19,303 nucleotides of DNA from Octopus sinensis. Lineage: Eukaryota. The stretch covers positions 1 through 19,303 of the forward strand of contig NW_021824207.1 of assembly GCF_006345805.1 (NCBI RefSeq). Direction: 5' to 3'. Shown in pieces: positions 1,597 to 19,303 of the stretch (its first letter is position 1; every line of letters starts with the position of its first letter). The notes below the pieces were generated by a model. That model was not told the DNA's origin. It worked only from the letters and a program-made list of their open reading frames with translations, and searched no databases. Both the position numbers and the translations under genes were made by a program.

Positions 1597-2068
1597 GGGA
1601 TTACCTTGGGTTTCCCATTCATAAAGGGTTTAGCTTTGTACCGTATCGTAAGGCCCCAAAACCTGTTGGCCTAAGACCTCTTCAAAATATGGAAGGGGAA
1701 AAGCCTTGGATTTACGTTTTCTGCAAAAGATCCTTTCAGCTCCCTGGCAAGAGATTATCCCAGTGACCATGTGGTTTCTATTAAATACCTCACCATTGAA
1801 GCGTTTCTACATATTCACTGAAACCACGGGTCTCCCATAAATATGAAAGAATTTGACCTCGGATACTCCAGCAATAACATCCCCACGTCATCCAACGAAC
1901 TATACACCCGTATGCAGCTGGAAAAGCTATTGGACGGGATTAGGCGTATGAGGTGAAGGGCTTTTCCACCCTCCATATTTAGAAGAGGTCTTAGGCCAAC
2001 AGGTTTTGGGGTCTAATGATACGCCATGAAGCTAAATCCTTTTTGGACCGGAAACCAAGGGTAATCCC
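1597..2068. mobile_element. Fold-back / MITE-like element with ~110-bp imperfect inverted arms
   Basis: 1654-1683 ccccaaaacctgttggcctaagacctcttc is the exact reverse complement of 1982-2011. Similarity extends imperfectly over 1597-1705 vs 1959-2068. No coding capacity seen. Confidence 0.6.
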
Positions 2069-2828: not shown

Positions 2829-2901
2829 TTCATTTTACATATTCCTCATTCAACATATATATTTATATATCCAACAGTAATGTATATAAATCTCTCTCTC
2901 T

Positions 2902-2940
<39 letters not shown>

Positions 2941-2950
2941 GAATTTCCTC

Positions 2951-2987
<37 letters not shown>

Positions 2988-3023
2988 ATAATATATATAT
3001 ATATATATATAATATATATGTAT

Positions 3024-3054
<31 letters not shown>

Positions 3055-3059
3055 TATAT

Positions 3060-3095
<36 letters not shown>

Positions 3096-3184
3096 GATAT
3101 ATATATGTATATATATATATATGTATATATATATGTATATATATATATATATATATATACATATATATATACATATATATATAT

Positions 3185-3232
<48 letters not shown>

Positions 3233-3268
3233 GATATATATATATACATATATATATAGATATATAAT

Positions 3269-3299
<31 letters not shown>

Positions 3300-3300
3300 C

Positions 3301-3331
<31 letters not shown>

Positions 3332-3382
3332 TATATATATATACATATATATATTATATATATATATATATAACATATATAA

Positions 3383-3436
<54 letters not shown>

Positions 3437-3466
3437 GAGAGAGAATTCTATCAATATCATATAATT

Positions 3467-3517
<51 letters not shown>

Positions 3518-3596
3518 GTAGTGAGAGAGAGAGATTTATATACATTACGGTTGGGATATATAATATAATATTTGAATGAGGAATATGTAAAATGAA
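2829..3596. repeat. Inverted duplication centred on a ~470-bp degenerate (TA)n tract
   Basis: 2829-2958 (ttcattttacatattcctcattcaa...tctctctctcactac...gaatttcctctcacta) is the reverse complement of 3430-3596, with small indels. Confidence 0.9.
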
Positions 3597-3693: not shown

Positions 3694-4058
3694 AGGCGCA
3701 GGAGTGGCTGTGTGGTAAGTAGCTTGCTAACCAACCACACGTTGCGGGTTCAGTCCCACTGCGTGGCATCTTGGGCAAGTGTCTTCTGCTATAGCCCCGG
3801 GCCGACCAATGCTTTGTGAGTGGATTTGGTAGACGGAAACTGAAAGAGCCTGTCGTATATATGTATATATATGTATATGTGTTTGTGTTTGTGTGTCTGT
3901 GTTTGTCCCCCTAGCATTGCTTGACAACCGATGCTGGTGTGTTTAGGTCCCCGTCACTTAGCGGTTCGGCAAAAAGAGACCGATAAAATAAGTACTAAAA
4001 GGTGGTGCTCCAGCATGGCGCAGTCAATGACTGAAACAAGTAAAAGAGTAAAAGAGTA
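3694..4058 (+). mobile_element. tRNA-derived SINE (cephalopod type) with internal microsatellite and (AAAAGAGT) tail
   Basis: Head aggcgcaggagtggctgtgtggtaag (A-box-like) and ggttcagtccc (B-box-like), followed by ttgggcaagtg, which resembles the CORE-SINE motif. A homologous copy lies at 7755-8177 on the minus strand. Confidence 0.85.
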
Positions 4059-4134
4059 TATATACATATATATATACATATATATATTATACATATATAT
4101 ATATATATATAATATACTATATATATACATATAT

Positions 4135-4177
<43 letters not shown>

Positions 4178-4222
4178 TGTATATATATAATATATATATA
4201 TGTTATATATATATATATATGT

Positions 4223-4256
<34 letters not shown>

Positions 4257-4304
4257 TAATATATGTAATATATATATATATATGTATATATATATATTAT
4301 ATAG

Positions 4305-4342
<38 letters not shown>

Positions 4343-4414
4343 TGTATAATATATATATATATTATGTATATATATATAATATGTGTATATGTATATATAT
4401 ATATATATATATGT

Positions 4415-4490
<76 letters not shown>
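4059..4490. repeat. Degenerate (TA)n tract
   Basis: Read directly. Confidence 0.97.
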
Positions 4491-4492
<2 letters not shown>

Positions 4493-4608
4493 CTCTTTTA
4501 CTCTTTTACTTGTTTCAGTCATTTGACTGCGGCCATGCTGGAGCACCACCTTTTAGTACTTATTTTATCGGTCTCTTTTTGCCGAACCGCTAAGTGACGG
4601 GGACCTAA
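4491..4608 (-). mobile_element. Inverted copy of the 3' ~117 bp of the SINE at 3694-4058
   Basis: Reverse complement of 3943-4058, differing only by small indels. Confidence 0.9.
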
Positions 4609-5083
4609 TATATATATATATATAGATATATATATATTTATATATATATATTTGAAAGTCTCTGTGTATGTGTGTGTGCACGCGCATTAATTTCATGGTG
4701 GTGGACACTAACCACCTCAACAGTTTTAAGAACCTCTTATTAATTATAGCAACATCAAAAGAATGCTTTATAAACTTTTATTCTTCTTTACTAGTCTTGA
4801 TCTTTTAATCATGTGTTCACTCGTGTTCAGCTCCCCTAAAACTTACTATAGTTAGGAATACAGGTAGATTAAGCTGAAACAATCTATTTAGGACATCTTT
4901 ATCCTGTCTAGAACACATTCTCATAGCAACATCTAGAGGATCTTACGAAGGTTGATTTTACGGGCAAACATCAAATGTACATGATCAGTTTGATCAAGTA
5001 TACAGTAGAAGACAATAATGACACATTGATATCCATCCTGATTTTCATGTAAATTTTCATTTTCTATTTTTACTTCCACAAAG

Positions 5084-5293
5084 GGTTCTGTTCAGTTGGA
5101 TATTCAAAACAATCAGAAAAGGACACCATTGCTTGAAGCCGTTTCCTGGGGTCACCTCGGAATGACACACAAGCTAATAGCTCTGGGTGCAAATGTAAAT
5201 GCTGTTGATGGTGAGGGTAACAGCTGTTTGCACCTGGCCGTGGAAAGAGAAGTGTTTGATTCCGAGGATGCACCCTTGGATTTACTAAACGAA
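5084..5293 (+). CDS. MIB2: Internal exon (phase 0-0, 70 aa) of a MIB2-like ankyrin/RING E3 ubiquitin ligase; two ankyrin repeats
   Basis: Acceptor ttccacaaAG and donor GTAAGT at 5294. Translation GSVQLDIQNNQKRTPLLEAVSWGHLGMTHKLIALGANVNAVDGEGNSCLHLAVEREVFDSEDAPLDLLNE has ankyrin hallmarks (TPLxxA..GH, GAxVN..D..G.S.LH.A). It parallels my recollection of the last ankyrin segment of MIB2 (GRCDVN...GDTALH...PLQLL). Probably a MIB2-like paralogue; orthology is not established. An alternative in-frame acceptor exists at 5095. Confidence 0.88.
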
Positions 5294-5330
5294 GTAAGTT
5301 TTTAAATTGTTTGCGTATATATATATATAT

Positions 5331-5362
<32 letters not shown>

Positions 5363-6092
5363 CTGTGTGTGTGTCTGTGTGAATTTGTGTATTTGTGAGT
5401 CTTTGTGTGAGTGTGAGAAAGAGACAGACAAGCAGACAAACTTTGGTTGTCATGTATCAATTCTCCCCTATCAACCCCATCCTCCATTACCATTCCGTGA
5501 TCCAGTCTCCCCTTGTGACCCAAGTGATATTATGTAACAAACAATATTCCATCTCCTTTCACTCTCAAAGATGTCGTCTCACCACGGTCGAGAGGTGACC
5601 CATCTCGGTTGTTGGCCATATAAACACAGCCATCACAATGTGACGGAGAAGTGGCCTATTTAATAGAGGAGATATTATTCTCAATTAACAATGATGCAGG
5701 ATAGAAGAGATGTCTGAGCTTTATAGTGCTGGCGCCATGGTAAATACATCCAGTCCATTCTATGAAGAATTCTGAGTGAAACTGCTCTCTATCCTACTTC
5801 TTGTACACGACATGAATCCACTGACTTCTTGTGGACATGTCATAACAATGTTCAATGTTAAAACACTAGAGAATGAATACAATAAAGCATGGTCCTTAGT
5901 GAGATTTCCTGTATTTAAGTTCTGTACTTAGGCACAGACACACACACAAACACTCACACACACAAACACACACAAGTAATGATTTTCAGTTTGAGTATAT
6001 ATCTTGTAAAATGCTGTTTAAAGCCCGTTTACTGTATTCGGCTATCTGATGTCATCAACAGTATGGACTTTAATACTACTGGACTTTTTGCT

Positions 6093-6285
6093 GTCATCTC
6101 ATAAATAAAGCAGTTTTTTATAATTCTTATATTTTTCAAAATTAAGATAAACAAAGTACTTTTTTCTGTTAATCTAAAACATATTCTCCTTCATTTTCTA
6201 CAATGCTCTTCCATCTTTCTGCTAGACTTACAAGTCGCCTCTTCCAAAATTCACTTGTCCGTGATTAAAAATACTCCTCCATTAC
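6093..6285 (-). mobile_element. Mariner transposase C-terminal remnant plus 3' end/TIR-like sequence
   Basis: Minus strand 6285->6169 reads VMEEYF*SRTSEFWKRRLVSLAERWKSIVENEGEYVLD*, matching the mariner C-terminal pattern (F..GI..L..RW..IV...G.Y). It has an internal stop, so it is non-functional. Confidence 0.75.
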
Positions 6286-6878
6286 TCTTCTGACTTGACA
6301 CTAATTCCTGCTTCCTTTACTTTACCATCATCATTCAAAGATGCTTCTTGCTTAATTATGGAAACATTATTGATATGTTTGGTCATGTCTGTGTGGTATT
6401 GACTTTGTTATGTTATAGGTGTTTTTGTTTCTGATATAACTTATGTTCTTTCTTCTCATGTTGTGTTATATTTATATATACAATAATCTTTCTTATGGCC
6501 ACATGCTCGCCTTTATCAAGCCAATTATATAGATAGATTCTTGTTGGTTTGTTCTTCCTAAATTTGACTTTTCTATTGAATATATTGACAAGTAAATATT
6601 TACTCATTAATAAGCTTGATGTTAATCAATACGGTTTCTCCTGCTCAATGTAATGACAATATATTTAGAGGGTGTCTCAGTGTTGAAAATAAAGTAAAAA
6701 CATGAAAATGGGAAATGGACTCAATTAAAGATTATGTAGGAACTCAATACTTTGTAATTGCTTTAATTAGTGGATAAACAAGCTATGAGTAAATTTAGAT
6801 GAACTTTTGTGTAATTAGGGGCATTTGTTTTGAATATTTGTGTAATATTGTCATAATTTTATATTTCATCATTTGTAG

Positions 6879-7049
6879 TGCTGCACTTCCCTTAACCTGA
6901 AAGAGATGAAATGCTCTCTGGTGTAGTGGTAGGTAGATATCTCGCCAGCCAGGGAGGGACTTTCACCATAAAAACAACAATATAACACACCATTGGACCT
7001 CATTAAGGACCCAAATTTGAGAAGAAAATTAAAGCTTTTCACCACCACA
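6879..7049 (+). pseudogene. MIB2: Frameshifted internal exon of the MIB2-like gene (last ankyrin-like repeat / linker to RING)
   Basis: Acceptor catttgtAG and donor GTAAGT at 7050. Allowing about five 1-nt losses it reads CCTSLNLK.DEMLSGVVVGRYLASQG.DFHHKNNN.NTPLDLIKDPNLRRKLK.F.PPQ. It starts in phase 0 (fits 5293) and ends CA| (fits the leading A of the RING exon). True pseudogenisation vs sequence error is unresolved. Confidence 0.8.
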
Positions 7050-7754
7050 GTAAGTATTTCCTGGCAATGGAACAGATAAACCAGTACATTTTCTATTTTG
7101 TATATAATCATGTTTATATGTTTATTTCGTTTTAATTCTACCAATACATTATACTGTCGCTAGTGTTTTTGTCAAAGGCCACACAATAAAAATATGCAGT
7201 GTCAGGAGATCAAAGAAAGAACACGATTTTGATTACATTCACATGATTCGTAGTGTTGCCAGTTATACTTCACTGTCCATCACCACCTACCCCTCTTCGT
7301 TCCCTATTTTAAAGATTTGTGATCAATACGAAAATATAGATCTAAATAATGAAGTGAATGAATTCCATTTTGAAACTGTTACTTAGAATTAAGTGGAATT
7401 TATCTGTCTACCACATCTTTTTCTCACTCTTCTATGTCCGAATCAGTCAATATTAAGAATGATTTCATAGAAAAATAACCTACAAACACCACCAACTGTG
7501 TAATATTATATTTCTGCAAATACTGATGGAATATTGCCACATATCTCATAGAGAAAAAACCTGCCAGGAAACGTAAATAATTCAAGTAACACATATACCA
7601 TTACTAGGTGTTTTAGTCGCCTTTGACTCCCGTATTTTATAAGGTTTGGCAATTTCTTTGCCATACATCTCTCTGTATTAGTTACTTAAGAAGCAGACAC
7701 ATTTGCCCCTCGGTGAATATACAAAACTTTCTTTGTCTGTTGAAATTCAAATAT

Positions 7755-7959: not shown

Positions 7960-8016
<57 letters not shown>

Positions 8017-8177
8017 GCGACGGGCTTCTTTCAGGTTCCCTCTACAAATCCATTCAAAAGCATTGGTCAGTCTGAATATATAGTAGAAGTCACTTGCCCA
8101 AAGTGCCACGCAGTGGGATTGAACCCAGAACCATGTGGTTGGTAATCAAGCTACTTATCACATCTACTCCTGCGCCT
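7755..8177 (-). mobile_element. tRNA-derived SINE, same family as 3694-4058
   Basis: Reverse complement starts aggcgcaggagt...ggttcaatcccactgcgtggcactttgggcaagtg and ends gctccagcatggccgcagtcaaatgactgaaacaagta, with an internal (TA)/(TG) tract. Confidence 0.85.

Positions 8178-8471: not shown

Positions 8472-8506
<35 letters not shown>
8288..8506. repeat. Compound triplet microsatellite (ATT)n-(GAT)n-(AAC)n-(AAT)n
   Basis: Read directly; explains the poly-I/Y/N/T ORFs at 8233-8634. Confidence 0.95.
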
Positions 8507-9197
8507 AATGCCCTGATGCAGTACCAGGCAGTGGCTCTCATGGCTTCTGATCTTAACTGATTGGAAGTGTTATCATGACATTGTTTTGTCTTGGTATAAA
8601 GATGGGCTACAGCAAATATTCTGCTCAATACCACAGATTTGCTAATGCCCTGATGCAGTACCAGGCAGTGGCTCTCATGGCTTCTGATCTTAACTGATTG
8701 GTAGTGTTATCATGAAACATTGTTTTTCTTGGTATAAAAGATGGGCTACACAGCAAATATTCTGCTCAACCACAGATTTGCTAATGCCCTGATGCAGTAA
8801 CCAGGCAGTGGCTCTCATGGCTTCTGATCTTAACTGATTGGTAGTGTTATCATGTACATTGTTTTGTCTTGGTATAAAAGATGGGTTACAGCAAATATTT
8901 GCTAAATTAATACACAGATTTGCTAATGCCCTGATGCAGTACCAGCAGTGGCTCTCATGGCTTCTGATCTTAACTGATTGGTAGTGTTATCACATGAAAC
9001 TTGTTTTGTCTTGGTATAAAGATGGGCTACAGCAAATATTCTGCTCAATACCACAGATTTGCTAATGCCCTGATGCAGTACCAGGCAGTGGCTCTCATGG
9101 CTTCTGATCTTACTGATTGGTAGTGTTATCATGTACATGTTTTGTCTTGTAAAAAGATGGGCTACAGCAATATTCTGCTCAATACCCCAGATTTGCT
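8507..9197 (+). repeat. Five tandem copies of a ~134-142-bp unit
   Basis: The unit aatgccctgatgcagtaccaggcagtggctctcatggc...cacagatttgct starts at 8507, 8644, 8783, 8925 and 9064. Confidence 0.95.
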
Positions 9198-10226: not shown

Positions 10227-10282
10227 TATCATCATCATCATCATCATCGTTTAACATCCGTTTTCCGTGGTAGCACGGGTTG
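10227..10282 (-). mobile_element. Short 3'-end fragment of the (CAT)n-flanked repeat family
   Basis: (cat)n cgtttaacatccgttttccgtggtagcacgggttg matches the starts of the copies at 14250, 16447 and 18903. Confidence 0.6.
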
Positions 10283-10946
10283 CACGAAAATATACATAAG
10301 TAATATTTGTAGGCACGCCAACATGAGTATCTGTTCGAATGGACTCTACTGCGAATGTTTAACCCCGAGAGAACAACTCCTGTAAGTAATTAACGACGCA
10401 GAGTGCATCCGATTAATTGCGAGCAGGGATCGAACCCCTACCATCTTATAGCAACAGGACCGCAGACCAGGTCTGGTTTCGGGCTATTCCTGCCACTGCT
10501 CAGTACTGGACACCTCATCTGCTAATCTGTGGAGACGGGATGTATAATAAAGTGTATATAATAAAATATATGTCTATAAAGAAACCTGTGTAGATATATT
10601 TGTTCAGAAGAATTGAGTTCGATGTTAGAAGTGAAATATATTTCTGGAATATATGCAGTTCACTGTGTGTCAACCAATTTCTATGATGTATCAGGGTCAA
10701 GACAAACATTTATCAATGTATGTATGCATGTGTGTGTATGTATGTATGTGTGTGTGTGTGTGTGTGTTTCTGCGTCATTTAACTACACAAAATGCTGTAT
10801 GTATGTAATTGTTTAAAGAAGAGTTTCTGCTCTACTCTTGGTAGTTACTGATGTATCTTATAATATTCTCTATTCCGAACATGTAAATAATGTAATATTT
10901 GTTATAAATGAATGTTATTGATTGGATGTTTCTGTTTTGTCCACAG

Positions 10947-11086
10947 ATGTTTGTGGTGCAGAAATAAAGCGGCCACAACAAAAGTCCATCCATGTGGACA
11001 CCTTGTAATATGTAAGGGATGTTCAAACGTTCCACTTCAACAATGTCTGAAGTGTTTAAAACCTGTAACAAGCAGAGGTCGAGTTG
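10947..11086 (+). CDS. MIB2: C3HC4 RING-finger exon (phase 2-1) of the MIB2-like E3 ligase
   Basis: Acceptor tctgttttgtccacAG and donor GTAAGA at 11087. CLWCRNKAATTKVHPCGHLVICKGCSNVPLQQCLKCLKPVTSRGRV has ligand spacing C-x2-C-x11-C-x-H-x3-C-x2-C-x7-C-x2-C, typical of MIB/IAP-type RINGs. Confidence 0.9.
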
Positions 11087-12202
11087 GTAAGAATATTCTT
11101 TGCTGATCTGTCTGTTTGTCCTGCTTGTCCCACTGCCCTTATTGTGTAGAATAATATACTTCATGTTGTTATGTAGACAGAGGTCTGCCATAATCTGGCA
11201 GATTTATGATAAAAGGTGTTCCTAGTGTCTGTTCTCTGTAATAGTATATCTCTCACACTACATCCACTAAACATTGACCTTATCCAAGTAGGAAACATGT
11301 CACACTTCAAGAGGGTTGTAGTCTGCAACGTAAAGATAATGGACGATTCTGCAAGATAATTAGTGAGTAACTGAAGTATCAATAAATCTCCATCAACACT
11401 ATAATTAATTATGAGTTATTAGAAGATAATTATGAGTTATTAGAAGATAATTAAATACAACAGTACTTACAAGGACATCAGTGTCATCTTTGGTAAAGTA
11501 TTAAATTTAGTAGAATATTTTAAAGGAGTAAAATTATATGTCACTAGTTTGAGAGACTTTAACACACAATTCCATGTTGTTATGTTTGTAATTGGAGGAT
11601 ATTAAGGCTAATAGAGACAGTTTTGTTTGTCAAGCAACCAGATCATGAAACCTTCAAATATATCCTGAATGAGATGACATTCTGGTGAACTGTGAAGTTA
11701 AAATTAGGGATTATCAGCAACAATGTTTAACAAAGAGATTAGGTGTATGTTTCTCCTTCTTGAAGTGGTTGTGACATGTGTTTGTTGTTATATCTTTGAT
11801 GAATAAATTTGTTGACACTGGAATCAAACAGGTTCTTAGTGAAGATCAGGGTTTTGAAAATGCAATAGATTTGGCATAGATATAAGCAAGGAAACCAAAG
11901 CCTACAGATAAACTGTTAGTAAGTGATAATTAAGTGATATAATTACAGCATTGTTAGATTATGTAGGATATCTTAACAGAGAGAGGAAATTTACAAAGAT
12001 CAACTAGAGTTCGTTTTGGAGCTAAATATTGGCTATTACATGGGTCCACTGTTGAAAGTATAAAAACATTGACCAAAACAATTATGATCGCTGGTTGGCC
12101 ATTGATGATATGAATGTTTCTCATTAATAAAATATAGATTATTAATAAATATAAAGGGATTGTGCTATAAATAAATATAAAACTTGGAGACACATATTTC
12201 AG

Positions 12203-12253
12203 AGAGTCCAAAGTTTGAAGAGAAGGGAGTGCAGACTGTGGCAGAGACAGTTG
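12203..12253 (+). CDS. Micro-exon E0 (51 bp, phase 1-1): (E)SPKFEEKGVQTVAETV; donor position reads ATGAGT
   Basis: Acceptor catatttcAG; homologous to E1-E3. If unspliced it reads through to VDEFKIRDLN* (stop 12280-12282). Confidence 0.6.
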
Positions 12254-13920
12254 ATGAGTTTAAAATTAGAGATCTTAATTAATTTCTATAGATTTTACAT
12301 TCACCTCAGCTATTTTGAGTATTAGAATGGTGGAGAACAAATCCCATCTCTAATTTCCATTTGAAAGGTTAGCTCTAAAGTAATTGTATTAAAAATATTA
12401 CTGAAATTTCATAAAGTCATGTTTAACATGTTTGGTTAAATGGATAAATTAAAAGCCACAATAGAGTTAATATTGTCTTCTGGAAGATGGAACTATAATT
12501 TATTAGTTTAGGTGTAAACTCGTGAATTATAAAATAGTTGTTTGTTTTTCTACTAAGATCTTTCGTAAGTTTTCTGATAGGTTATTCATGATGTTGTTAT
12601 GTAGCCAGATGTCTGTCGTAATATTTTGTATTTTTCTGGGGTTGTGTACCCTGAATGTCTCTGGTTAGAATACATTTTGTAGTTGCAAATTAGAAAATTA
12701 TATTAAATGTTAACTCTGTATAAGAATATTCATCATGAACTTAATTTTATTAAATGTTAAATTTAGTATTGAACCGTGAATATCTGTTTATATTTAAACA
12801 AATTATTGGTGTTTATACAAAATATACGATCAGAAATTGAATTTGACTTGAACTCACAAATCCTTGTTTGTAGCTATATATAATATACACTTATTACATT
12901 GTTTGAACAACATTTACCATCCATATAGTCATTCTTTTTCTCACTCTTGTTAGATTTTAGATGATATTAATGCTAAAAGAGGCACAGTTTTCTGAGTGTT
13001 TCACCCTTTGGTCTTGATTGTTGCGTTCAAATTTTTTAATGGAAGTTAGTCATTGTTATTTGACAGGAAATTAATTAATCATTAGTATTTGGCAGTGGAC
13101 TTGGTTATATCTTTCTTCGTTTGCTCATGGAACTACGATAATATTAGCTGTGCTGAGACACAATCATATTCATAGTAATGAAGGTTATATGTTCTTTACT
13201 CAGATTATATACAATCTATATTGATATCTAGTATTGCACCGTCAAGCACAGTGCCATTATATCACATATATACCCAATTATCATGATAATTAATAAGCTA
13301 TAATTCATTAACCTCTTACATTTGTATGTATGAAATGTAACTTATTTTGTCATAGGAACATCGTGTACCCTCACCTTACATTTTATATCTTGTTAGGGAT
13401 CATGTTGGGGAAGGGTGTATGGAATTTGGCTTGTGCAGATGTTTATTAGGAGACAGATTGTGTGCGGGGTGGAGGGGATACACAAAAGGACATCTTATGA
13501 ACTCAGTTTTACTTAATTAGAGAGGAATGTTGATTAGTGAACTCTAGAGATGAGAGTACTGTGCCATGCCATAGGTCTGGCACAGTTATAAGAAGAGAAA
13601 CAAGCTAAGAGAAAATTGTTATCAAGTGTTAATTAAATGAGATAATTGGTACATTGTTAGAATATTTAATGTGTTTTTTAGAGGAGAGAGAGAGAGAGAG
13701 GGTGGATTTAGGAATGTTAGTCTGTTTTATTGTGGACATATTGGGCTATTACATGGGACCCACTGTAGAAAGTACAGAAATATGACCAAAACCATAATGG
13801 TCAACATTTGACCAGTAACGACAGGAATTGAATGTCTCACAATAACAAGATAGAGTTTAATAAAAAATAAGATGAAGAAAGTTTATTTTTAAATGTAAAA
13901 CTTGGAAATATTTATTTCAG

Positions 13921-13998
13921 AGGCTCCAAAGTTTGAAGACAGGTGTGTACAAACAGAGGCTACATGTCAGGAATTAGGGGCTGCATCTCAGGCAATAG
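13921..13998 (+). CDS. Micro-exon E1 (78 bp, phase 1-1): (E)APKFEDRCVQTEATCQELGAASQAI
   Basis: Acceptor tttatttcAG and donor GTGAGT at 13999. Open frame; phase matches the RING exon donor. Confidence 0.72.
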
Positions 13999-14249
13999 GT
14001 GAGTATAAAATAATAGTTCCCAATTGATTTCTGTAAGGTTTTCTTCCCCCGAGTATATTGTGCTCGAAAGAATAACTGAAAACAGCTTCCATTCCTATTT
14101 TCCAATTGAACGATTATCTGTATAATAATTGAATTAAAGATATCGATTTACTGAGAGTTTATGAAATACCCATTGAGATTAATGCTGTTGGTAATAATGT
14201 TCAAATTAGAAGACACAATAGAGTTAATATTGTCATTTGGTCACAGAAC

Positions 14250-14750
14250 TCATCATCATCATCATCATCATATCATCATCATCATCATCATCATCATTAA
14301 CATCCGTTTCTTATGGTGGCATGGGTCGGACGATTTCACTGGCAAGGCAGTAGGCTGCGTCAGGCTGCAATGTGATCTGGCAAGGTTTCCACATATGTAT
14401 GCCATTCCTAACGCCAACCACTCCGAGAGTGTGGTGGGTGCCTTTTACGTGCCACTGACACAGGAGCCAGTCGGGGTGGGGGCTGGCATTGACCACGTTC
14501 TGATGGTGCTTTTTACGTGCCACCGGCACAGGGAACCAGTCGGGCGGCACTGGCAACAAACAATGTTTGAATGGTACTTATTATGGTGCCACCGGCACAG
14601 GTGCCAGCCATGCGGCACTGGCATCGGCCATAATTACAATTTGCATTTTGATTTCGATCTTGATTTGATTTTGATTTGTGATTTCTGATTTTTGGTTTTA
14701 CTTGACTCAGAAATTCTTCTCAAGCGCAACTTATCACTCTGTAATTCAAG
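14250..14750 (-). mobile_element. Retroposon-like interspersed repeat with (CAT)n/(ATG)n tail, copy 1
   Basis: GC-richer block starting (cat)n taacatccg, containing ~60-bp internal subrepeats (tacgtgccaccggcacagg..ccagtc). Paralogous copies at 16447 and 18903. Orientation is inferred from the tail. Confidence 0.6.
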
Positions 14751-14889
14751 GGTACTTTTAATATTAGGCTGTGCTGAGACACAATCATATTCATAGTAAT
14801 GAAGGTTATATGTTCTTTACTCAGATTATATACAATCTATATTGATATCTAGTATTGCACCGTCAAGCACAGTGCCATTGTATCACATA

Positions 14890-15459
14890 CACTTGCGTCG
14901 AAATTAATTAGCACTTCTCAAATTTCTACATTTTCTTACATTTTCTTAATTTAATTAACTTATTATCAGAAACGAACATGTTTTTTAATCGAAAATTATT
15001 AAAACATATCCCGCACACCACATAATTGATATTAATCGTGAAATTTAGTCAATATCTTGTTACTACTCCTCCTTCCGCAGGCAGCAATGACGGCTGCTAC
15101 GCGGGTCGGCATGCTGTCTATGAGTGCCTGCAGGTACTGTGCAGGGATGGCCCCTCATCAGCAAGAAGTGCCCAAACAGCTCGTGTCGGTTCCTGTATTT
15201 GCTGCACATTCAAATCCCTACCCAATCGACTCCAGAGGTTCTCAATAGGGTTCAGGTCAGGTGACTGGCCAGCACGTACTCTCGCCACCAAAGAGGTATC
15301 CCGTACTATCTCAACGTACTTTTGCTGCGTTGATGTTGCCTTCGACGGCATAGAGCCGCCCAACACAACTGTAGCTGAACGCCCCTCACACATCAGACCA
15401 CCCCCACCATGCTTCATGGTGAGCAAATCAAGGGTGCTAATTAATTTCTGACCGTAGTG
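14890..15459 (-). mobile_element. Internally deleted non-autonomous Tc1-family transposon (570 bp) with TA target-site duplication
   Basis: TIRs are cacttgcgtcgaaattaattagcac and the reverse complement cactacggtcagaaattaattagcac, with TA at 14888-14889 and 15460-15461. The minus strand encodes TMKHGGG, SPDLNPIENLW and SMPTRVAAVIAA...TRY*. Empty paralogous sites at ~13260 and ~17921 have one TA fewer. Confidence 0.93.
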
Positions 15460-16122
15460 TATATACCCAATTATCATGATAATTAATAAGCTATAATTCA
15501 TTAACTCTCTTACATTTGTATGTCTGAAATGTAAACTTATTTTGTCATAGGAACATCGTGTACCCTCACCTTACATTTTATATCTTGTTAGGGATCATGT
15601 TGGGGAAGGGTGTATGGAATTTGGCTTGTGGAGATGATTTTTAGGGGACAGATTGTTGCGGGGTGGAGGTATGTACATAAAGGACATGTCTTTATGACCT
15701 CAGTTTTACTTAATTAGAGAGGAATGTTGATTAGTGAATTCTAGAGATGAGAGGACTGTGCCATGCCATAGATTTGGCACAGTTATAAGAAAGAAAGACA
15801 AAGCTAAGAGAAAACTGTTATCAAGTGTTAATTAAAGGAGATAATTGCAACATTGTTAGAATATTTAATGTGTTCTTAGAGAGAGAGAGAGAGAGGGAGA
15901 GGGTGGATTTAGGAATGTTAGTCTGTTTTATTGTGGACATATTGGGCTTTTACCTGAGACCACTGTAGAAAGTACAGAAATATTGACCAAAACCATAATG
16001 GTCAACATTTGACCATTAACGACAGGAATTGAATGTCTCACAATAACAAGATAGAGTTTAATAAAAATAAAGATGAAAGAAAGTTTATTTTTAAATGTAA
16101 AACTTGGAAATATTTATTTCAG

Positions 16123-16199
16123 AGGCTCCAAAGTTTGAAGACAGGTGTGTACAAACAGAGGCTACATGTCAGGAATTAGGGGCTGCACTCAGGCAATTG
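16123..16199 (+). CDS. Micro-exon E2 (77 bp, 1-nt loss relative to E1/E3): (E)APKFEDRCVQTEATCQELGAA then frameshift
   Basis: Acceptor tttatttcAG and donor GTGAGT at 16200. It reads gctgcactcag where E1 has gctgcatctcag. Confidence 0.62.
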
Positions 16200-16446
16200 G
16201 TGAGTATAAAATATAGTTCCCAATTGATTTCTGTAAGGTTTTCTTCCCCCGATTATTGTGCTTGAAAGAATAACTGAAAACCGCTTCCACTCCTATTTTC
16301 CAATTGAACGATTATCTGTATAATAATTGTATTAAGATATCGATTTACTGTGAGTTTATGAAATACCCATTGAGGTTAATGCTGTTGGTAATAATGTTCA
16401 AATTAGAAGACACAATAGAGTTAATTTTGTCAATTGGTCACAGAAC

Positions 16447-16860
16447 TCATCATCATCATCATCATCATCGTTTAACGTCCGTTTATAGTAGCATGGGTCG
16501 GACGATTTCACTGGCAAGGCAGTAGGCTGCGCCAGGCTCCAATGTATCTGGCAAGGTTTCCACATATGTATGCCATTCCTAACGCCAACCACTCCGAGAG
16601 TGGGTGGGTGCCTTTTACGAGCCACCGGCGCAGGAGTCAGTCGGGGTGGGGGCTGGCATCGACCACGTTCGGATGGTGCTTTTTACGTGCCACGGCACAG
16701 GGAACTAGTCAGGCGGCAGTGACAAGGACCTATGCTTCTATGGTACTTATAACGTGACACAGGAACAGGTGCCAGTCAGGCGGCACTGGCATCGGTCACA
16801 ACTACAATTTGCATTTTGATTTCGATCTTGAATTGCTTTTGATTTTCATTTCTGTTATTG
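16447..16860 (-). mobile_element. (CAT)n-flanked repeat, copy 2
   Basis: Homologous to 14250-14750 and at the same position in its module. Confidence 0.6.
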
Positions 16861-18574
16861 CCTGGTGGACTATGATGAAAACGAGGGGTTCAGGAATGAT
16901 CCCTAGTGAACTCCTACTTCTATCCGGAATTCTTCTTCACTATACTCATTGCCGATCCTCACCTTACTACAGGGCCTCTTCAACTCTTATAATCGCTCGT
17001 CAATCCCTAGTTTCCGCATTAGCTGTAAAAAGGATTCTATTAAATATTCCACTGAAATTTCATAAAATCAAGGTTAACGTGGTTGGTAAAATGGTTAAAT
17101 AAGAAGACATAATAGAGTTAATGATGTCTTTTAGGACAGAGAACTAAAACATTTTGTTGTTTATTTGTAAACAGGTGAGTTAACGAGAAAGTGTTTTGTT
17201 TCTTTTGCTACTAAGGTATTTCCTAAGTTTTCTCATAGGTTATTGTTGTTGTTATTGTTATGTAGCCAGATGTCTGTCATGATATGTTGTTTAGGTACGT
17301 ACCCTGAATGTCTCAGGTCAGAATAACTTTGTTATAAATTAAAGAAATTAAAAATCAAATCTCTAAGATTATAAGTATAATGATCATTAACGTTGATTAA
17401 ATATTAAATTTAGTATTGAACGGTGAACATCTGTTTGCATTTAAACAAAATATTGGTGTTGACATAAAATACAAAGATAGGAATTAAATATGAGTTCCCT
17501 GTGTGACTTGATCTCACAAATCCTTGTTTGTAACTATATATAATATACACTTATTACATTGTTTGAACAACATTTACCATCCATATAGTCATTCTTTTTC
17601 TCACTCTTGTTAGATTTTAGATGATATTAATGCTAAAAGAGGCACAGTTTTCTGAGTGTTTCACCCTTTGGTCTTGATTGTTGCGTTCAAATTATTTAAT
17701 GAAAGATAGTCATTGTTATTTGACCAGGAAATGAATTAATCATTGGTATTTGGCAGTGGACTTGGTTATATCTTTCTTCGTTTGCTCATGGAACTACCAT
17801 AATATTAGCTGTGCTGAGACACAATCATATTCATAGTAATGAAGGTTATATGTTCTTTACTCAGATTATATACAATCTATATTGATATCTAGTATTGCAC
17901 CGTCAAGCACAGTGCCATTGTATCACATATATACCCAATTATCATGATAATTAATAAGCTATAATTCATTAACTCTCTTACATTTGTATGTATGAAATGT
18001 AAATTTATTTTGTCATAGGGACATCGTGTACCCTCACCTAACATCTTATATCTTGTTAGGGATCATGTTGTGGAGATGATTTTTAGGGGACAGATTGTGT
18101 GTGGGATGGAGCGTATGTACATAAAGGACATGTCTTTATGACCTCAGTTTTACTTAATTAGAGAAGAATGTTGATTAGTGAATTCTAGAGATGAGAGGAC
18201 TGTGCCATGCCATAGATTTGGCACAGTTATAAGAAAAGAAAGACAATGCTAAGAGAAAACTCTTATCAAGTGTTAATTAAATGAGATAATTGCAACATTG
18301 TTAGAATATTTAATGTGTTTTGAAAGAGAGAGGGAGAGAGAGAGAGAGACAGAAGTGAGGGTGGATTTAGAAATGTTAGTCTCTTTTATTGTGGACATAT
18401 TGGGCTATTACATGGGACCACTGTAGAAAGTACAGAAATATTGACCAAAACCATAGTGGTCAACATTTGACCATTAACGCAGAAATTGAATGTCTCACAT
18501 AAAAAGATAGAGTTTAATAAATAAAGATAAAGAAAGTTTCTTTTTAAATGTAAAAATTGGAAATGTTATTTCAG

Positions 18575-18652
18575 GTGCTCCAAAGTGTGAGGACAGGTGT
18601 GTACAAACAGAGGCTACATGTCAGGAATTAGGGGCTACATCTCAGGCAATTG
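18575..18652 (+). CDS. Micro-exon E3 (78 bp, phase 1-1): (G)APKCEDRCVQTEATCQELGATSQAI
   Basis: Acceptor gttatttcAG and donor GTGAGT at 18653. Open frame; several substitutions relative to E1. Confidence 0.72.
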
Positions 18653-18902
18653 GTGAGTATAAAATAATAGTTCCCAATTGATTTCTGTAAGGTTTTCTTC
18701 CCCCGAGTATATTGTGCTTGAAAGAATAACTGAAAACAGCTTCCATTCCTATTTTCCAATTGAAGAATTATCTGTATAATAATTGAATTAAAGATATCGA
18801 TTTACTGTGAGTTTATGAAATACCCATTGAGGTTAATGCTGTTGGTAATAATGTTCAAATTAGAAGACACAATAGAGTTAATTTTGTCATTGGTCACAGA
18901 AA

Positions 18903-19303
18903 TCATCATCATCATCATCATCATCATTTAACATCCGTTTCTTATGGTGGCATTGGGTCGGACGATTTCACTGGCAAGGCAGTAGGCTGCGTCAGGCTGC
19001 AATGTGATCTGGCAAGGTTTCCACATATGTATGCCATTCTAACGACAACCACTTCGAGAGTGTGGTGGGTGCTTTTTACGTGCCACCGACACAGGAGCCA
19101 GTTGAAGTTGGGGCTGGCCATTAACCACGTTCGGAAGGTACTTTTTATGTGCCAACGGCACAGGGAACCAGTCAGGCGGCACTGGCAAAAAACAATGTTT
19201 GAATGGTACTTATTACGTGCCACCGGCACGGGTGCCAGCCAGGCGGCACTGGCATCGGCTGTAATTACAATTTGCATTTGATTCCGATCTTGATTTGATT
19301 TTG
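18903..19303 (-). mobile_element. (CAT)n-flanked repeat, copy 3 (cut by window end)
   Basis: Homologous to 14250-14750 and at the same position in its module. Confidence 0.6.

What the first reader, a model, noticed from the sequence alone, without database searches (positions are those of the whole stretch)
12203..18652. Expanding array of symmetric micro-exons encoding LC8/DYNLL-like motifs behind the RING of a MIB2-like E3 ligase
Seen: four paralogous 51-78-bp exons follow the RING exon, all phase 1-1 and compatible with its phase-1 donor. E1-E3 have canonical AG/GTGAGT sites. Joined, they give ...GRV-ESPKFEEKGVQTVAETV-EAPKFEDRCVQTEATCQELGAASQAI-EAPKFEDRCVQTE...-GAPKCEDRCVQTE.... The diverged E0 and the young E1-E3 both keep [DE]-[KR]-x-V-Q-T while the downstream residues differ. 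Established: the dynein light chain LC8 (DYNLL) binds [KR]-x-T-Q-T-type motifs in disordered tails, and multivalent arrays of such motifs tune dimerisation (e.g. ASCIZ). Inference: exon duplication is building a multivalent LC8-binding tail that could dimerise or localise this ligase, with valency set by copy number or exon skipping. Caveat: the motif has V rather than the strict T at position -1.
Basis: partly seen in the sequence, partly recalled or inferred. Interest (0 to 1): 0.85.

Follow-up and report, generated by a model that had tools for sequence, protein, structure and literature searches.

The report
Duplicated micro-exon linker, octopus RING–Death gene
The four short repeated exons are real: they are tandem copies of the first death-domain exon and form a variable, flexible linker between the RING and death domains in an Octopus gene family; their conserved core resembles a docking site for the dimerising hub protein LC8, but that is untested and this gene copy looks damaged.

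Summary
Observation partly confirmed. Four paralogous exon-like segments lie behind a RING exon (10947-11086): E0 12203-12253, E1 13921-13998, E2 16123-16199, E3 18575-18652. Two details are wrong. E2 is 77 nt, so it shifts the frame. E0 has ATGAGT instead of a GT donor.

Each segment sits in a 0.7-2.3 kb tandem duplication. Each unit is homologous, flanks included, to the segment carrying Death-domain exon 1 in related loci (E 1e-80 to 1e-106). Annotated relatives in Octopus sinensis, O. vulgaris and O. bimaculoides show ANK repeats, one RING, 0-7 such units, then a Death domain. Isoforms differ by whole units. The array is therefore an internal linker, not a tail.

A structure model of a relative gives the units pLDDT 31-35, which suggests disorder.

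The LC8 idea stays plausible. VQT anchors occur in validated LC8 binders. EDRCVQTE scores like a mid-range binder. The best-kept unit positions ([DE]-[KR]-x-V-Q-T) match the published LC8 consensus. One unit type carries canonical KETQT.

Against it: only 25 of 52 distinct units keep a compatible anchor, young copies show no constraint, and I saw no transcript or binding data. As assembled, this copy is broken by five deletions, which may be assembly errors. Moderate interest.

The parts
5084..5293 (+). Ankyrin-repeat exon (70 codons, phase 0-0) of the same gene
   Evidence: tblastn to P0001, P0002 and P0004 at 85-90% identity. Translation is open. Relatives match Pfam Ank families.
6879..7049 (+). 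Middle exon, damaged as assembled: 171 nt against 176 nt in relatives. It has four window-specific deletions (5 nt in total) that give frameshifts and in-frame stops. It cannot be skipped without putting the RING exon out of frame.
   Evidence: Alignments to L001, L004 and L005. Conceptual splice. The window's small indels here are deletion-biased, 11 deletions to 0 insertions over 4626-7736.
10947..11086 (+). RING exon (zf-C3HC4_3 type) ending with a phase-1 donor G|GTAAGA
   Evidence: The RING is 45 of 46 residues identical to O. vulgaris P0038. Relatives match Pfam PF13920.
11731..12525 (+). Oldest duplication unit (E0 unit), homologous to the genomic segment that holds Death-domain exon 1
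   Evidence: blastn of L005 Death exon 1 plus or minus 500 nt: 68% identity over 845 columns, E 6e-106.
12203..12253 (+). E0: a 51-nt unit of the old 17-aa type (ESPKFEEKGVQTVAETV). The acceptor is intact and the donor is dead (ATGAGT). It is either skipped or used as a terminal exon, with a read-through stop at 12280-12282.
   Evidence: L001, L004 and L005 carry the same AT. The O. sinensis model P0001 ends in this exon, and the O. vulgaris model P0038 skips it.
13520..14240 (+). E1 duplication unit, homologous to the Death exon 1 segment
   Evidence: 68% identity over 742 columns, E 7e-85.
13921..13998 (+). E1: an intact 78-nt phase 1-1 cassette exon, EAPKFEDRCVQTEATCQELGAASQAI
   Evidence: The identical peptide is spliced into P0017, P0018, P0019 and P0038.
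15717..16437 (+). E2 duplication unit, homologous to the Death exon 1 segment
   Evidence: 68% identity over 741 columns, E 9e-89.
16123..16199 (+). E2: 77 nt because of a 1-nt deletion. Including it shifts the frame.
18161..18891 (+). E3 duplication unit, homologous to the Death exon 1 segment
   Evidence: 67% identity over 749 columns, E 4e-80.
18575..18652 (+). E3: an intact 78-nt phase 1-1 cassette exon, GAPKCEDRCVQTEATCQELGATSQAI
   Evidence: The identical peptide is the third unit of O. sinensis P0012 and of O. vulgaris P0015.

Best explanation
What it is. The window holds the 3' part of one member of a gene family seen here only in Octopus and annotated as 'MIB2-like'. Its proteins are ankyrin repeats, one RING, a variable linker, then a Death domain. 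The linker is built from tandem duplicates of the genomic segment carrying Death-domain exon 1: the exon, about 400 nt upstream and about 300 nt downstream.

How the units behave. The copies keep that exon's acceptor, GTGAGT donor and phase 1-1 symmetry. They no longer match the Death profile. They encode 17-26-aa peptides that a structure model of a relative leaves at low confidence, which suggests disorder. Because they are symmetric, they can be included in series or skipped. Gene copy number and splicing therefore set the length of the spacer between the RING and the Death domain.

Most likely specific function (inferred, not shown). The conserved unit core [DE]-[KR]-x-V-Q-T-[VE] acts as an LC8/DYNLL docking strand. 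The number of units would then also set how many LC8 dimers can bridge two ligase chains, bringing the RINGs and Death domains into a pair.

This locus. The array is E0 (old, donor dead), E1, E2 (frameshifted) and E3. It probably continues past the window end to more units and the Death exons. As assembled, this copy is disabled by four deletions in the middle exon and one in E2.

My confidence by layer:
- anatomy and origin: about 0.9
- real use as cassette exons in the family: about 0.75
- LC8 docking: about 0.4-0.45
- this copy being a true pseudogene rather than mis-assembled: about 0.5
For: Anatomy:
- Exon coordinates, splice sites and lengths.
- Tandem duplications containing the exons.

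Origin:
- Death exon 1 plus or minus 500 nt from O. vulgaris L005 aligns to all four window units over 740-845 columns at 67-68%, E 1e-80 to 1e-106.
- The O. sinensis Death exon 1 gives the same result.
- Exon interiors are also alike: Death exon 1 against E0 has z = 4.6.
- At protein level, ESPVLKERDLLRVAK (Death exon 1) lines up with ESPKFEEKGVQTVAE (E0).
- Both exon kinds are phase 1-1, and the units sit directly upstream of Death exon 1 in L002 and L005.

Use as exons:
- P0012 is four units plus a Death domain. P0013, P0015, P0016, P0017 and P0018 are RING, 2-3 units, then Death. P0023 and P0025 carry a 26-aa and a 17-aa unit.
- Isoforms differ by whole units.
- Pfam architecture of relatives.

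Disorder:
- AlphaFold2 model of P0017: RING pLDDT 74-84, Death 63-84, and the two units (residues 151-202) 31-35.

LC8:
- The published consensus allows V at -1 (PMC3078936).
- Validated binders with V-Q anchors are listed in PMC6607443 Table S4.
- In my position-weight matrix built from those 79 binders, EDRCVQTE scores 13.1 bits. That is the 35th percentile of held-out binders and above 81% of anchor-containing non-binders. A random 8-mer reaches it with P = 7.5e-6.
- Across 51 family proteins, the only 8-mers that reach binder-like scores lie in linker units.
- Across 52 distinct units, the best-kept positions are P3, [DE]7, [KR]8, V10, Q11 and T12, and x9 is the most variable core position. 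This matches the LC8 pattern.
- One unit type carries canonical KETQT, three times in P0048.
- Between the three old unit lineages, the VQT codons differ only synonymously. Elsewhere pN is 0.24-0.41.

Damage in this copy.
Against: - I saw no transcript reads. The evidence for splicing is annotated gene models only, mostly automated predictions.
- No binding data exist.
- Only 25 of 52 distinct units have an LC8-compatible anchor (VQT, TQT or VQV). VKT (8 units), VQA (5), VQM (3), SQR, VWT and VKK occur too. Some proteins are mostly VKT (P0061) or VQA (P0057).
- Among 16 young E1-type peptides, Q11 and T12 are as variable as any other position.
- Young exons are no more conserved in substitutions than their intron flanks: 5.6% against 7.2% upstream and 3.5% downstream. 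Variable sites split about 7 non-synonymous to 3 synonymous by my count from the alignment.
- The E0 exon interior is more diverged from E1 (39%) than the flanking intron is (about 22%).
- VQT is two substitutions from the ancestral Death helix-1 sequence LQR, so it could arise easily by chance.
- Many peptides with a TQT anchor fail to bind LC8 (PMC6607443).
- The unit conservation profile comes from an HMM that I seeded myself, so it is partly circular.
Confidence: 0.6

Rival explanations
1. Neutral spacer. The units are duplicated Death exon 1 copies that are tolerated because they are symmetric and encode disorder. They only vary the distance between RING and Death domain, or do nothing. 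The VQT core is left over from the ancestral helix-1 sequence (K-x-L-Q-R-V-A) plus drift, not a docking site.
For: - Young copies show no extra constraint.
- Copy number varies freely between loci, and many isoforms or genes have no unit at all, for example P0024, P0027, P0031 and P0034.
- About half of the distinct units lack an LC8-compatible anchor.
- Some Death exon 1 copies already carry Q at the aligned position, as in YLQRAA and FLQDVA.
- The paralogue L004 and window E2 are decaying.
Against: - [KR]8, V10, Q11 and T12 are among the best-kept positions across old unit types and across O. bimaculoides, O. sinensis and O. vulgaris.
- The VQT codons differ only synonymously between old lineages.
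- A canonical KETQT variant exists and is itself repeated.
- In my scan, binder-like 8-mers occur nowhere else in these proteins.
Confidence: 0.35
2. Locus-level reading. The gene copy in this window is a decaying paralogue (pseudogene). E0-E3 here are then relics, whatever the units do in intact family members.
For: - The middle exon has four window-specific deletions with in-frame stops, and it cannot be skipped in frame.
- E2 has a 1-nt deletion.
- No annotated protein in the 5.8-billion-protein collection is identical to the window's exons.
- A sister copy, L004, is clearly decayed: its E1 lost the acceptor and 13 nt, another unit is frameshifted, and the RING is read out of frame.
Against: - All window-specific small indels in 4626-7736 are deletions (11 to 0). 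L004 shows a similar cluster elsewhere. This pattern also fits long-read consensus errors.
- The ANK exon, RING exon, E1 and E3 are open with intact splice sites.
Confidence: 0.5
3. The units dock a partner other than LC8 through a beta-strand-like K-x-V-x-T-V-x-E pattern, or they serve as RING-proximal lysine-rich or acidic substrate sites. The match to LC8 would be coincidental.
For: - V10, T12 and V13 and the alternating pattern survive in units where Q is replaced by K (VKT in 8 of 52 units), which LC8 should not accept (anchor rules from PMC6607443).
- The units lie between two protein-interaction or catalytic domains.
Against: I found no candidate partner or known motif for this pattern. 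The full LC8 consensus, including -4 D/E, -3 K/R and +2 E/V, is matched by the majority type.
Confidence: 0.12
4. One reading: a C-terminal tail of a MIB2 orthologue that is currently expanding by exon duplication to raise LC8 valency.
For: Repeated VQT units lie behind the RING. Some gene models end inside a unit by read-through: P0001, P0002, P0014, P0033 and P0043.
Against: - Intact relatives continue into Death exons.
- Full-length relatives lack the mind-bomb N-terminal domains.
- Unit copies within the array are as old as the divergence between loci, and identical positional counterparts exist in L002.
- E2 is broken and the E0 donor is dead.
Confidence: 0.08

Closest known systems
Multivalent LC8/DYNLL clients (ASCIZ/ATMIN, GKAP/DLGAP1, Chica/FAM83D, RSP3, Nup159)
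   Same: Several copies of an 8-residue [TVI]-Q-[TV]-anchored motif sit in a disordered segment, spaced by short linkers. The unit core EDRCVQTE / E[ED]K.VQTV matches the published consensus and resembles the validated binders SDKGVQTP, EDKGVQCE and RHQSVQTE.
   Different: Binding is untested. Each motif here is its own symmetric micro-exon of very regular length, so valency could be set by splicing and by tandem duplication. About half the units have non-permissive anchors such as VKT, VQA and VQM.
Mind bomb E3 ligases (MIB1/MIB2), the name given by the annotation
   Same: Ankyrin repeats are followed by a C-terminal zf-C3HC4_3 RING.
   Different: Full-length relatives show no MIB/HERC2 or ZZ domains and only one RING, and they end in a Death domain. 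Membership in the mind bomb family is not supported.
Tandem exon duplication producing cassette or alternative exons
   Same: An exon and its flanking intron are duplicated in tandem. Splice sites and phase are preserved, and annotated isoforms differ by which copies are included.
   Different: The copies are joined in series rather than used one at a time. The source exon encoded the first helix of a folded domain, whereas the copies encode a segment predicted to be disordered.
Ankyrin-repeat plus Death-domain proteins (ANKDD1, ankyrins, NF-kB p100/p105); named from my own knowledge, not tested here
   Same: Ankyrin repeats are combined with a C-terminal Death domain.
   Different: A RING and a micro-exon linker are inserted between them. 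No sequence relationship beyond the shared domains was tested.

Membership tests
LC8/DYNLL-binding linear motif | Anchor [T/V/I]-Q-[T/V], with Q at position 0 | tested here: met
   E0, E1, E2 and E3 all carry V-Q-T. V-Q anchors occur in validated binders (PMC6607443 Table S4). The consensus is in PMC3078936.
LC8/DYNLL-binding linear motif | Favourable flanks: D/S-type residue at -4, K/R at -3, strand-breaking D/E/P at +2, no proline before the anchor | tested here: met
   EDRCVQTE scores 13.1 bits, the 35th percentile of held-out binders and above 81% of non-binders. E0 EEKGVQTV is weaker at 9.5 bits, the 10th percentile. This is my own simple matrix, not LC8Pred.
LC8/DYNLL-binding linear motif | Motif lies in an intrinsically disordered segment | tested here: met
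   In the AlphaFold2 model of relative P0017, the two units have pLDDT 31-35 between a confident RING and a confident Death domain. This is a prediction on a relative, not on the window's own product.
LC8/DYNLL-binding linear motif | Motif conserved in orthologues and paralogues | tested here: inconclusive
   [KR]8, V10, Q11 and T12 are among the best-kept positions, yet only 25 of 52 distinct units keep a permissive anchor. Q and T vary among young copies. Between old lineages the VQT codons show synonymous changes only.
LC8/DYNLL-binding linear motif | Physical, Q-dependent binding to the LC8 dimer groove | not testable with these tools
   Needs calorimetry, a pull-down or a complex-structure prediction.
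Mind bomb (MIB1/MIB2) E3 ligases | Ankyrin repeats followed by C-terminal RING finger(s) | tested here: met
   Pfam Ank families and zf-C3HC4_3 match in relatives. The window's ANK and RING exons align to them. Only one RING is present.
Mind bomb (MIB1/MIB2) E3 ligases | N-terminal MIB/HERC2 and ZZ domains | tested here: not met
   The full-length relatives P0052, P0060 and P0061 (505-563 aa) start with ankyrin repeats and have no such Pfam match. The window itself does not reach the 5' end of the gene.
Symmetric cassette exon | AG acceptor and GT donor | tested here: met
   E1, E2 and E3 have cag|...|GTGAGT. E0 fails, with ATGAGT.
Symmetric cassette exon | Length a multiple of three with the same phase at both ends | tested here: inconclusive
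   E0 (51 nt), E1 (78 nt) and E3 (78 nt) meet it. E2 (77 nt) does not, and the missing base may be an assembly error.
Symmetric cassette exon | Observed inclusion and skipping in transcripts | not testable with these tools
   Only annotated gene models and their isoforms in relatives were available. I could not examine any reads.
Death domain (PF00531) | Common descent of the units from a Death-domain exon | tested here: met
   The Death exon 1 segment aligns to all four units with their flanks, E 1e-80 to 1e-106.
Death domain (PF00531) | Unit peptides still match the Death profile or fold | tested here: not met
   The Pfam Death match in P0012 starts after the four units, at residues 111-188. 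The units have low confidence in the model.

The most novel reading that the evidence does not exclude
A cephalopod-specific family of ankyrin-RING-Death ligases has turned the first exon of its own Death domain into a genomically encoded, alternatively spliced array of LC8-docking micro-exons. LC8-driven pairing of the RING and Death domains would then be tuned exon by exon. This would be a documented birth of a short linear motif module from a folded-domain exon.
Probability: 0.3. Interest if true: 0.65.

Novelty: new variant of a known kind. Interest (0 to 1): 0.45.

Why it matters
If the units dock LC8, this would be a clear case where the valency of a hub-protein client is written as one motif per symmetric micro-exon. 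Valency would then be adjustable by tandem duplication and by exon skipping. It would also show a docking motif arising from an exon that once encoded a helix of a folded domain.

Without LC8, it still documents a sizeable, undescribed Octopus gene family (ANK-RING-linker-Death, mislabelled MIB2-like). The family shows birth-and-death evolution and a linker built by serial exon duplication.

For annotation, it warns of three things. Several models end artificially in a unit by read-through. E0-type exons with dead donors mimic terminal exons. This particular locus may be a pseudogene or mis-assembled.

Tried and rejected
- Rfam scan of the whole window: no hits.
- Literature search for octopus, death domain and MIB2: one unrelated paper, so I found no description of the family.
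- Locus look-ups for P0002, P0013 and P0019 failed because those isoforms are not the longest product on record.
- Test for purifying selection on the young exons against their intron flanks: no signal in substitutions, only fewer indels.
- I considered E0 as a U12-type AT-AC intron donor. ATGAGT does not resemble the ATATCC donor (from my own knowledge), so I rejected it.
- I tried to identify the window as the same locus as an annotated contig. L001+L002, L004 and L005 are all collinear with it, but only at 88-97% identity. Species and exact orthology stay unresolved.
- Exon-interior similarity of Death exon 1 to E1 alone is not significant (z = 1.0-1.6). The homology rests on the flanks and on E0.
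- The HMM-based unit census is partly circular because I chose the seeds.

Full report
**1. What is in the window**

The sequence is AT-rich and full of microsatellites and dispersed repeats. It carries part of one gene on the + strand. The exons, mapped with relatives found, are:

- an ankyrin-repeat exon at 5084-5293
- a middle exon at 6879-7049
- a RING exon at 10947-11086, ending in a phase-1 donor
- four paralogous exon-like segments behind it: E0 12203-12253 (51 nt), E1 13921-13998 (78 nt), E2 16123-16199 (77 nt) and E3 18575-18652 (78 nt)

E1 to E3 have cag|...|GTGAGT sites. Two details differ from the finding:

- E2 lacks one base. Including it shifts the frame and gives a stop inside E3.
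- E0 is followed by ATGAGT. It can only be skipped or read through to a stop at 12280-12282.

**2. The segments are tandem duplicates, not chance**

Self-comparison shows nested tandem duplications of 1.4-2.3 kb at 88-91% identity. These carry the exons together with their introns. Later insertions include a SINE-like element with a (CAT)n head in each young unit and a Tc1/mariner remnant between E1 and E2.

Among seven young units from the window and related loci, substitution divergence is 5.6% in the exon, 7.2% upstream and 3.5% downstream. Only indels are rarer in the exon. About 7 variable exon sites are non-synonymous and 3 synonymous, by my count from the alignment. Similarity among E1, E2 and E3 therefore says nothing about function.

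**3. Relatives show what the exons are for**

Protein searches returned only Octopus proteins named 'MIB2-like' or 'MIB1-like', or uncharacterised.

- O. sinensis P0012 is four E1-type units spliced in series, followed by a full Death domain (PF00531, E 4.6e-9). Its locus L002 has units at 283, 2365, 5005 and 7104, Death exon 1 at 11904 (72 nt, phase 1-1) and Death exon 2 at 14327.
- P0013, P0015, P0016, P0017 and P0018 are RING, then 2-3 units, then Death.
- P0023 and P0025 carry one 26-aa unit plus one 17-aa unit (ARPIFEDKEVQTVEEPR) spliced internally.
- Isoforms of single genes differ by whole units: P0013/P0015, P0030/P0031, P0032/P0034/P0041 and P0016/P0025. One O. sinensis gene has isoforms X9-X22 whose lengths step by 17 aa.
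- Full-length members are ankyrin repeats, one RING, the linker and a Death domain. They have no MIB/HERC2 or ZZ domain.

The array is therefore an internal RING-Death linker, not a tail. The mind bomb label is nominal.

An exhaustive HMMER search of 1.84 billion representatives found only 65 proteins at E of 0.001 or better. Every named protein I looked up was from O. bimaculoides, O. sinensis or O. vulgaris.

**4. Origin of the units**

Death exon 1 plus or minus 500 nt from the O. vulgaris locus L005 aligns to each of the four window units over 740-845 columns at 67-68% identity, with E from 1e-80 to 1e-106. The aligned window ranges are 11731-12525, 13520-14240, 15717-16437 and 18161-18891. 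The O. sinensis Death exon 1 gives the same picture.

Further points agree:

- The exon interiors are similar (Death exon 1 against E0, z = 4.6).
- At protein level, ESPVLKERDLLRVAK lines up with ESPKFEEKGVQTVAE.
- Phase and position agree, since the units lie directly upstream of Death exon 1.

The units are therefore serial duplicates of the first Death-domain exon that have lost the Death profile. V-Q-T aligns with L-Q/L-R of Death helix 1.

**5. State of this particular copy**

The window is collinear with three other stretches, always at 88-97% identity:

- O. sinensis contigs L001+L002, which look like adjacent pieces of one locus
- O. sinensis L004
- O. vulgaris L005, the gene of P0038, whose RING is 45 of 46 residues identical to the window's

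All of them share E0 with the same dead donor. P0038 skips E0 and two units, uses one unit and goes on to Death exon 1.

The window's middle exon has four deletions (5 nt) found in none of the other three. These give frameshifts and stops, and the exon cannot be skipped in frame. With E2, that makes five disabling lesions.

All 11 window-specific small indels in 4626-7736 are deletions. L004 shows a similar cluster elsewhere. Long-read consensus error is therefore a live alternative to true decay. L004 is clearly decayed: one unit lost its acceptor and its first 13 nt, another is frameshifted, and the RING is read out of frame in P0011. The family thus shows birth-and-death evolution.

I see no evidence that the array is currently expanding. 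Units within an array are about as diverged from each other as from units in other loci. E3 is identical in peptide to the third unit of L002.

**6. The LC8 hypothesis**

Established knowledge:

- The LC8 consensus is [D/S]-4 K-3 X-2 [T/V/I]-1 Q0 [T/V]+1 [D/E]+2 (PMC3078936).
- Binders sit in disordered regions. Flanks matter, and many TQT peptides do not bind (PMC6607443).
- That paper's Table S4 lists validated binders with V-Q anchors: RHQSVQTE, RCVSVQTD, SDKGVQTP and EDKGVQCE.

Tests run here:

- A simple position-weight matrix from the 79 binders scores EDRCVQTE (E1-E3) at 13.1 bits. That is the 35th percentile of held-out binders and above 81% of anchor-containing non-binders. A random 8-mer reaches it with P = 7.5e-6. 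E0 EEKGVQTV scores 9.5 bits, the 10th percentile.
- In 51 family proteins (11,677 8-mers), the only binder-like scores lie in linker units.
- An AlphaFold2 model of P0017 gives the two units pLDDT 31-35, between a confident RING (74-84) and a confident Death domain (63-84).
- Across 52 distinct units, the best-kept positions are P3, [DE]7 (41 of 52), [KR]8 (48), V10 (43), Q11 (38) and T12 (36). x9 is the most variable core position. This is the LC8 pattern.
- A unit type with canonical KETQT exists and is repeated three times in P0048.
- Between the three old unit lineages, the VQT codons differ only at synonymous sites, while pN elsewhere is 0.24-0.41.

Against the hypothesis:

- Only 25 of 52 units keep a permissive anchor. 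VKT, VQA, VQM, SQR, VWT and VKK occur, and some proteins are mostly VKT or VQA.
- Q and T vary freely among young E1-type copies.
- The E0 exon interior is more diverged from E1 than its flanks are.
- VQT is two substitutions from the ancestral LQR.
- The unit census is partly circular, because I chose the HMM seeds.

I put LC8 docking of the VQT/TQT units at about 0.4-0.45.

**7. Verdict**

It is a variable, probably disordered RING-Death linker made of serially duplicated, symmetric micro-exons born from Death exon 1, in a gene family seen only in Octopus.

The LC8 reading is a reasonable, testable hypothesis with family-level support, but it has no direct evidence and clear exceptions. The copy in this window is damaged as assembled.

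I rate it a new variant of a known kind (tandem exon duplication, and a possible multivalent LC8 client) with moderate interest.

Noticed in passing
window 14890-15460 (- strand; ORF 15118-15501): Remnant of a Tc1/mariner-type transposase (...SPDLNPIENLW...; weak Pfam DDE_3 match, E 0.003) inserted in the spacer between E1 and E2. On its upstream side lies a 131-nt segment (14759-14889) that is a 98.5% copy of 13139-13268.
   Followed up: partly
window 14250-14700, 16445-16850, 18900-19303; short piece at 10228-10290: A SINE-like element with a (CAT)n head and an internal 68-nt repeat (2.7 copies at 14437-14623) sits downstream of each young E unit. It was therefore inserted before those units were duplicated. 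No Rfam family matched.
   Followed up: partly
window 8506-9197: A 140-nt tandem repeat, 5 copies at 90% identity, in the intron between the middle exon and the RING exon.
   Followed up: no
window 2829-3596 and 3943-4608: Two large near-perfect palindromes (87% and 92% self-complementary) built around long (AT)n tracts. The second has SINE-like arms (3943-4030 and 4497-4608).
   Followed up: no
window 1597-1705 and 1959-2068: A 110-nt inverted repeat pair (84.5% identity) bounds a roughly 470-nt element, which looks like a MITE.
   Followed up: no
window 3694-3906 and 7964-8177 (inverted); L003 3390-3754: Copies of a dispersed repeat (81% identity within the window, 96.7% to L003), likely an octopus SINE.
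   Followed up: no
window 4626-7736: In a four-way alignment, window-specific small indels are all deletions (11 deletions, 0 insertions, against 1-3 deletions in the other loci). Four of them fall in the 171-nt middle exon. L004 shows a similar cluster in another segment. This suggests local long-read consensus errors.
   Followed up: partly
L003 9671 and L004 17633: A further diverged unit type (ETPTSVKDALTTSQPV) with a CAA in place of the CAG acceptor lies downstream of the E array. A related peptide (ETPMCVKEVLTTSQQI) is spliced into O. bimaculoides P0035.
   Followed up: partly
L003 7602 and L005 51902: In these two loci the ARPIFEDKEVQTV-type 17-aa unit has a dead donor (CTGAGT) and is read through to a stop. 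The same unit type is spliced internally in P0023, P0025 and P0032. Dead donors therefore arose independently in two unit lineages (ATGAGT in E0, CTGAGT here).
   Followed up: partly
P0064 and P0078 (O. bimaculoides P0064; species of P0078 not looked up): Other Death-domain proteins of this clade carry a different repeat (PSTSQ(H/P)E or QSTSQ runs) directly upstream of the same Death exon 1-type sequence. P0078 is a 1283-aa LRR and seven-transmembrane protein. Repeat arrays in front of this Death domain may be a wider habit.
   Followed up: no
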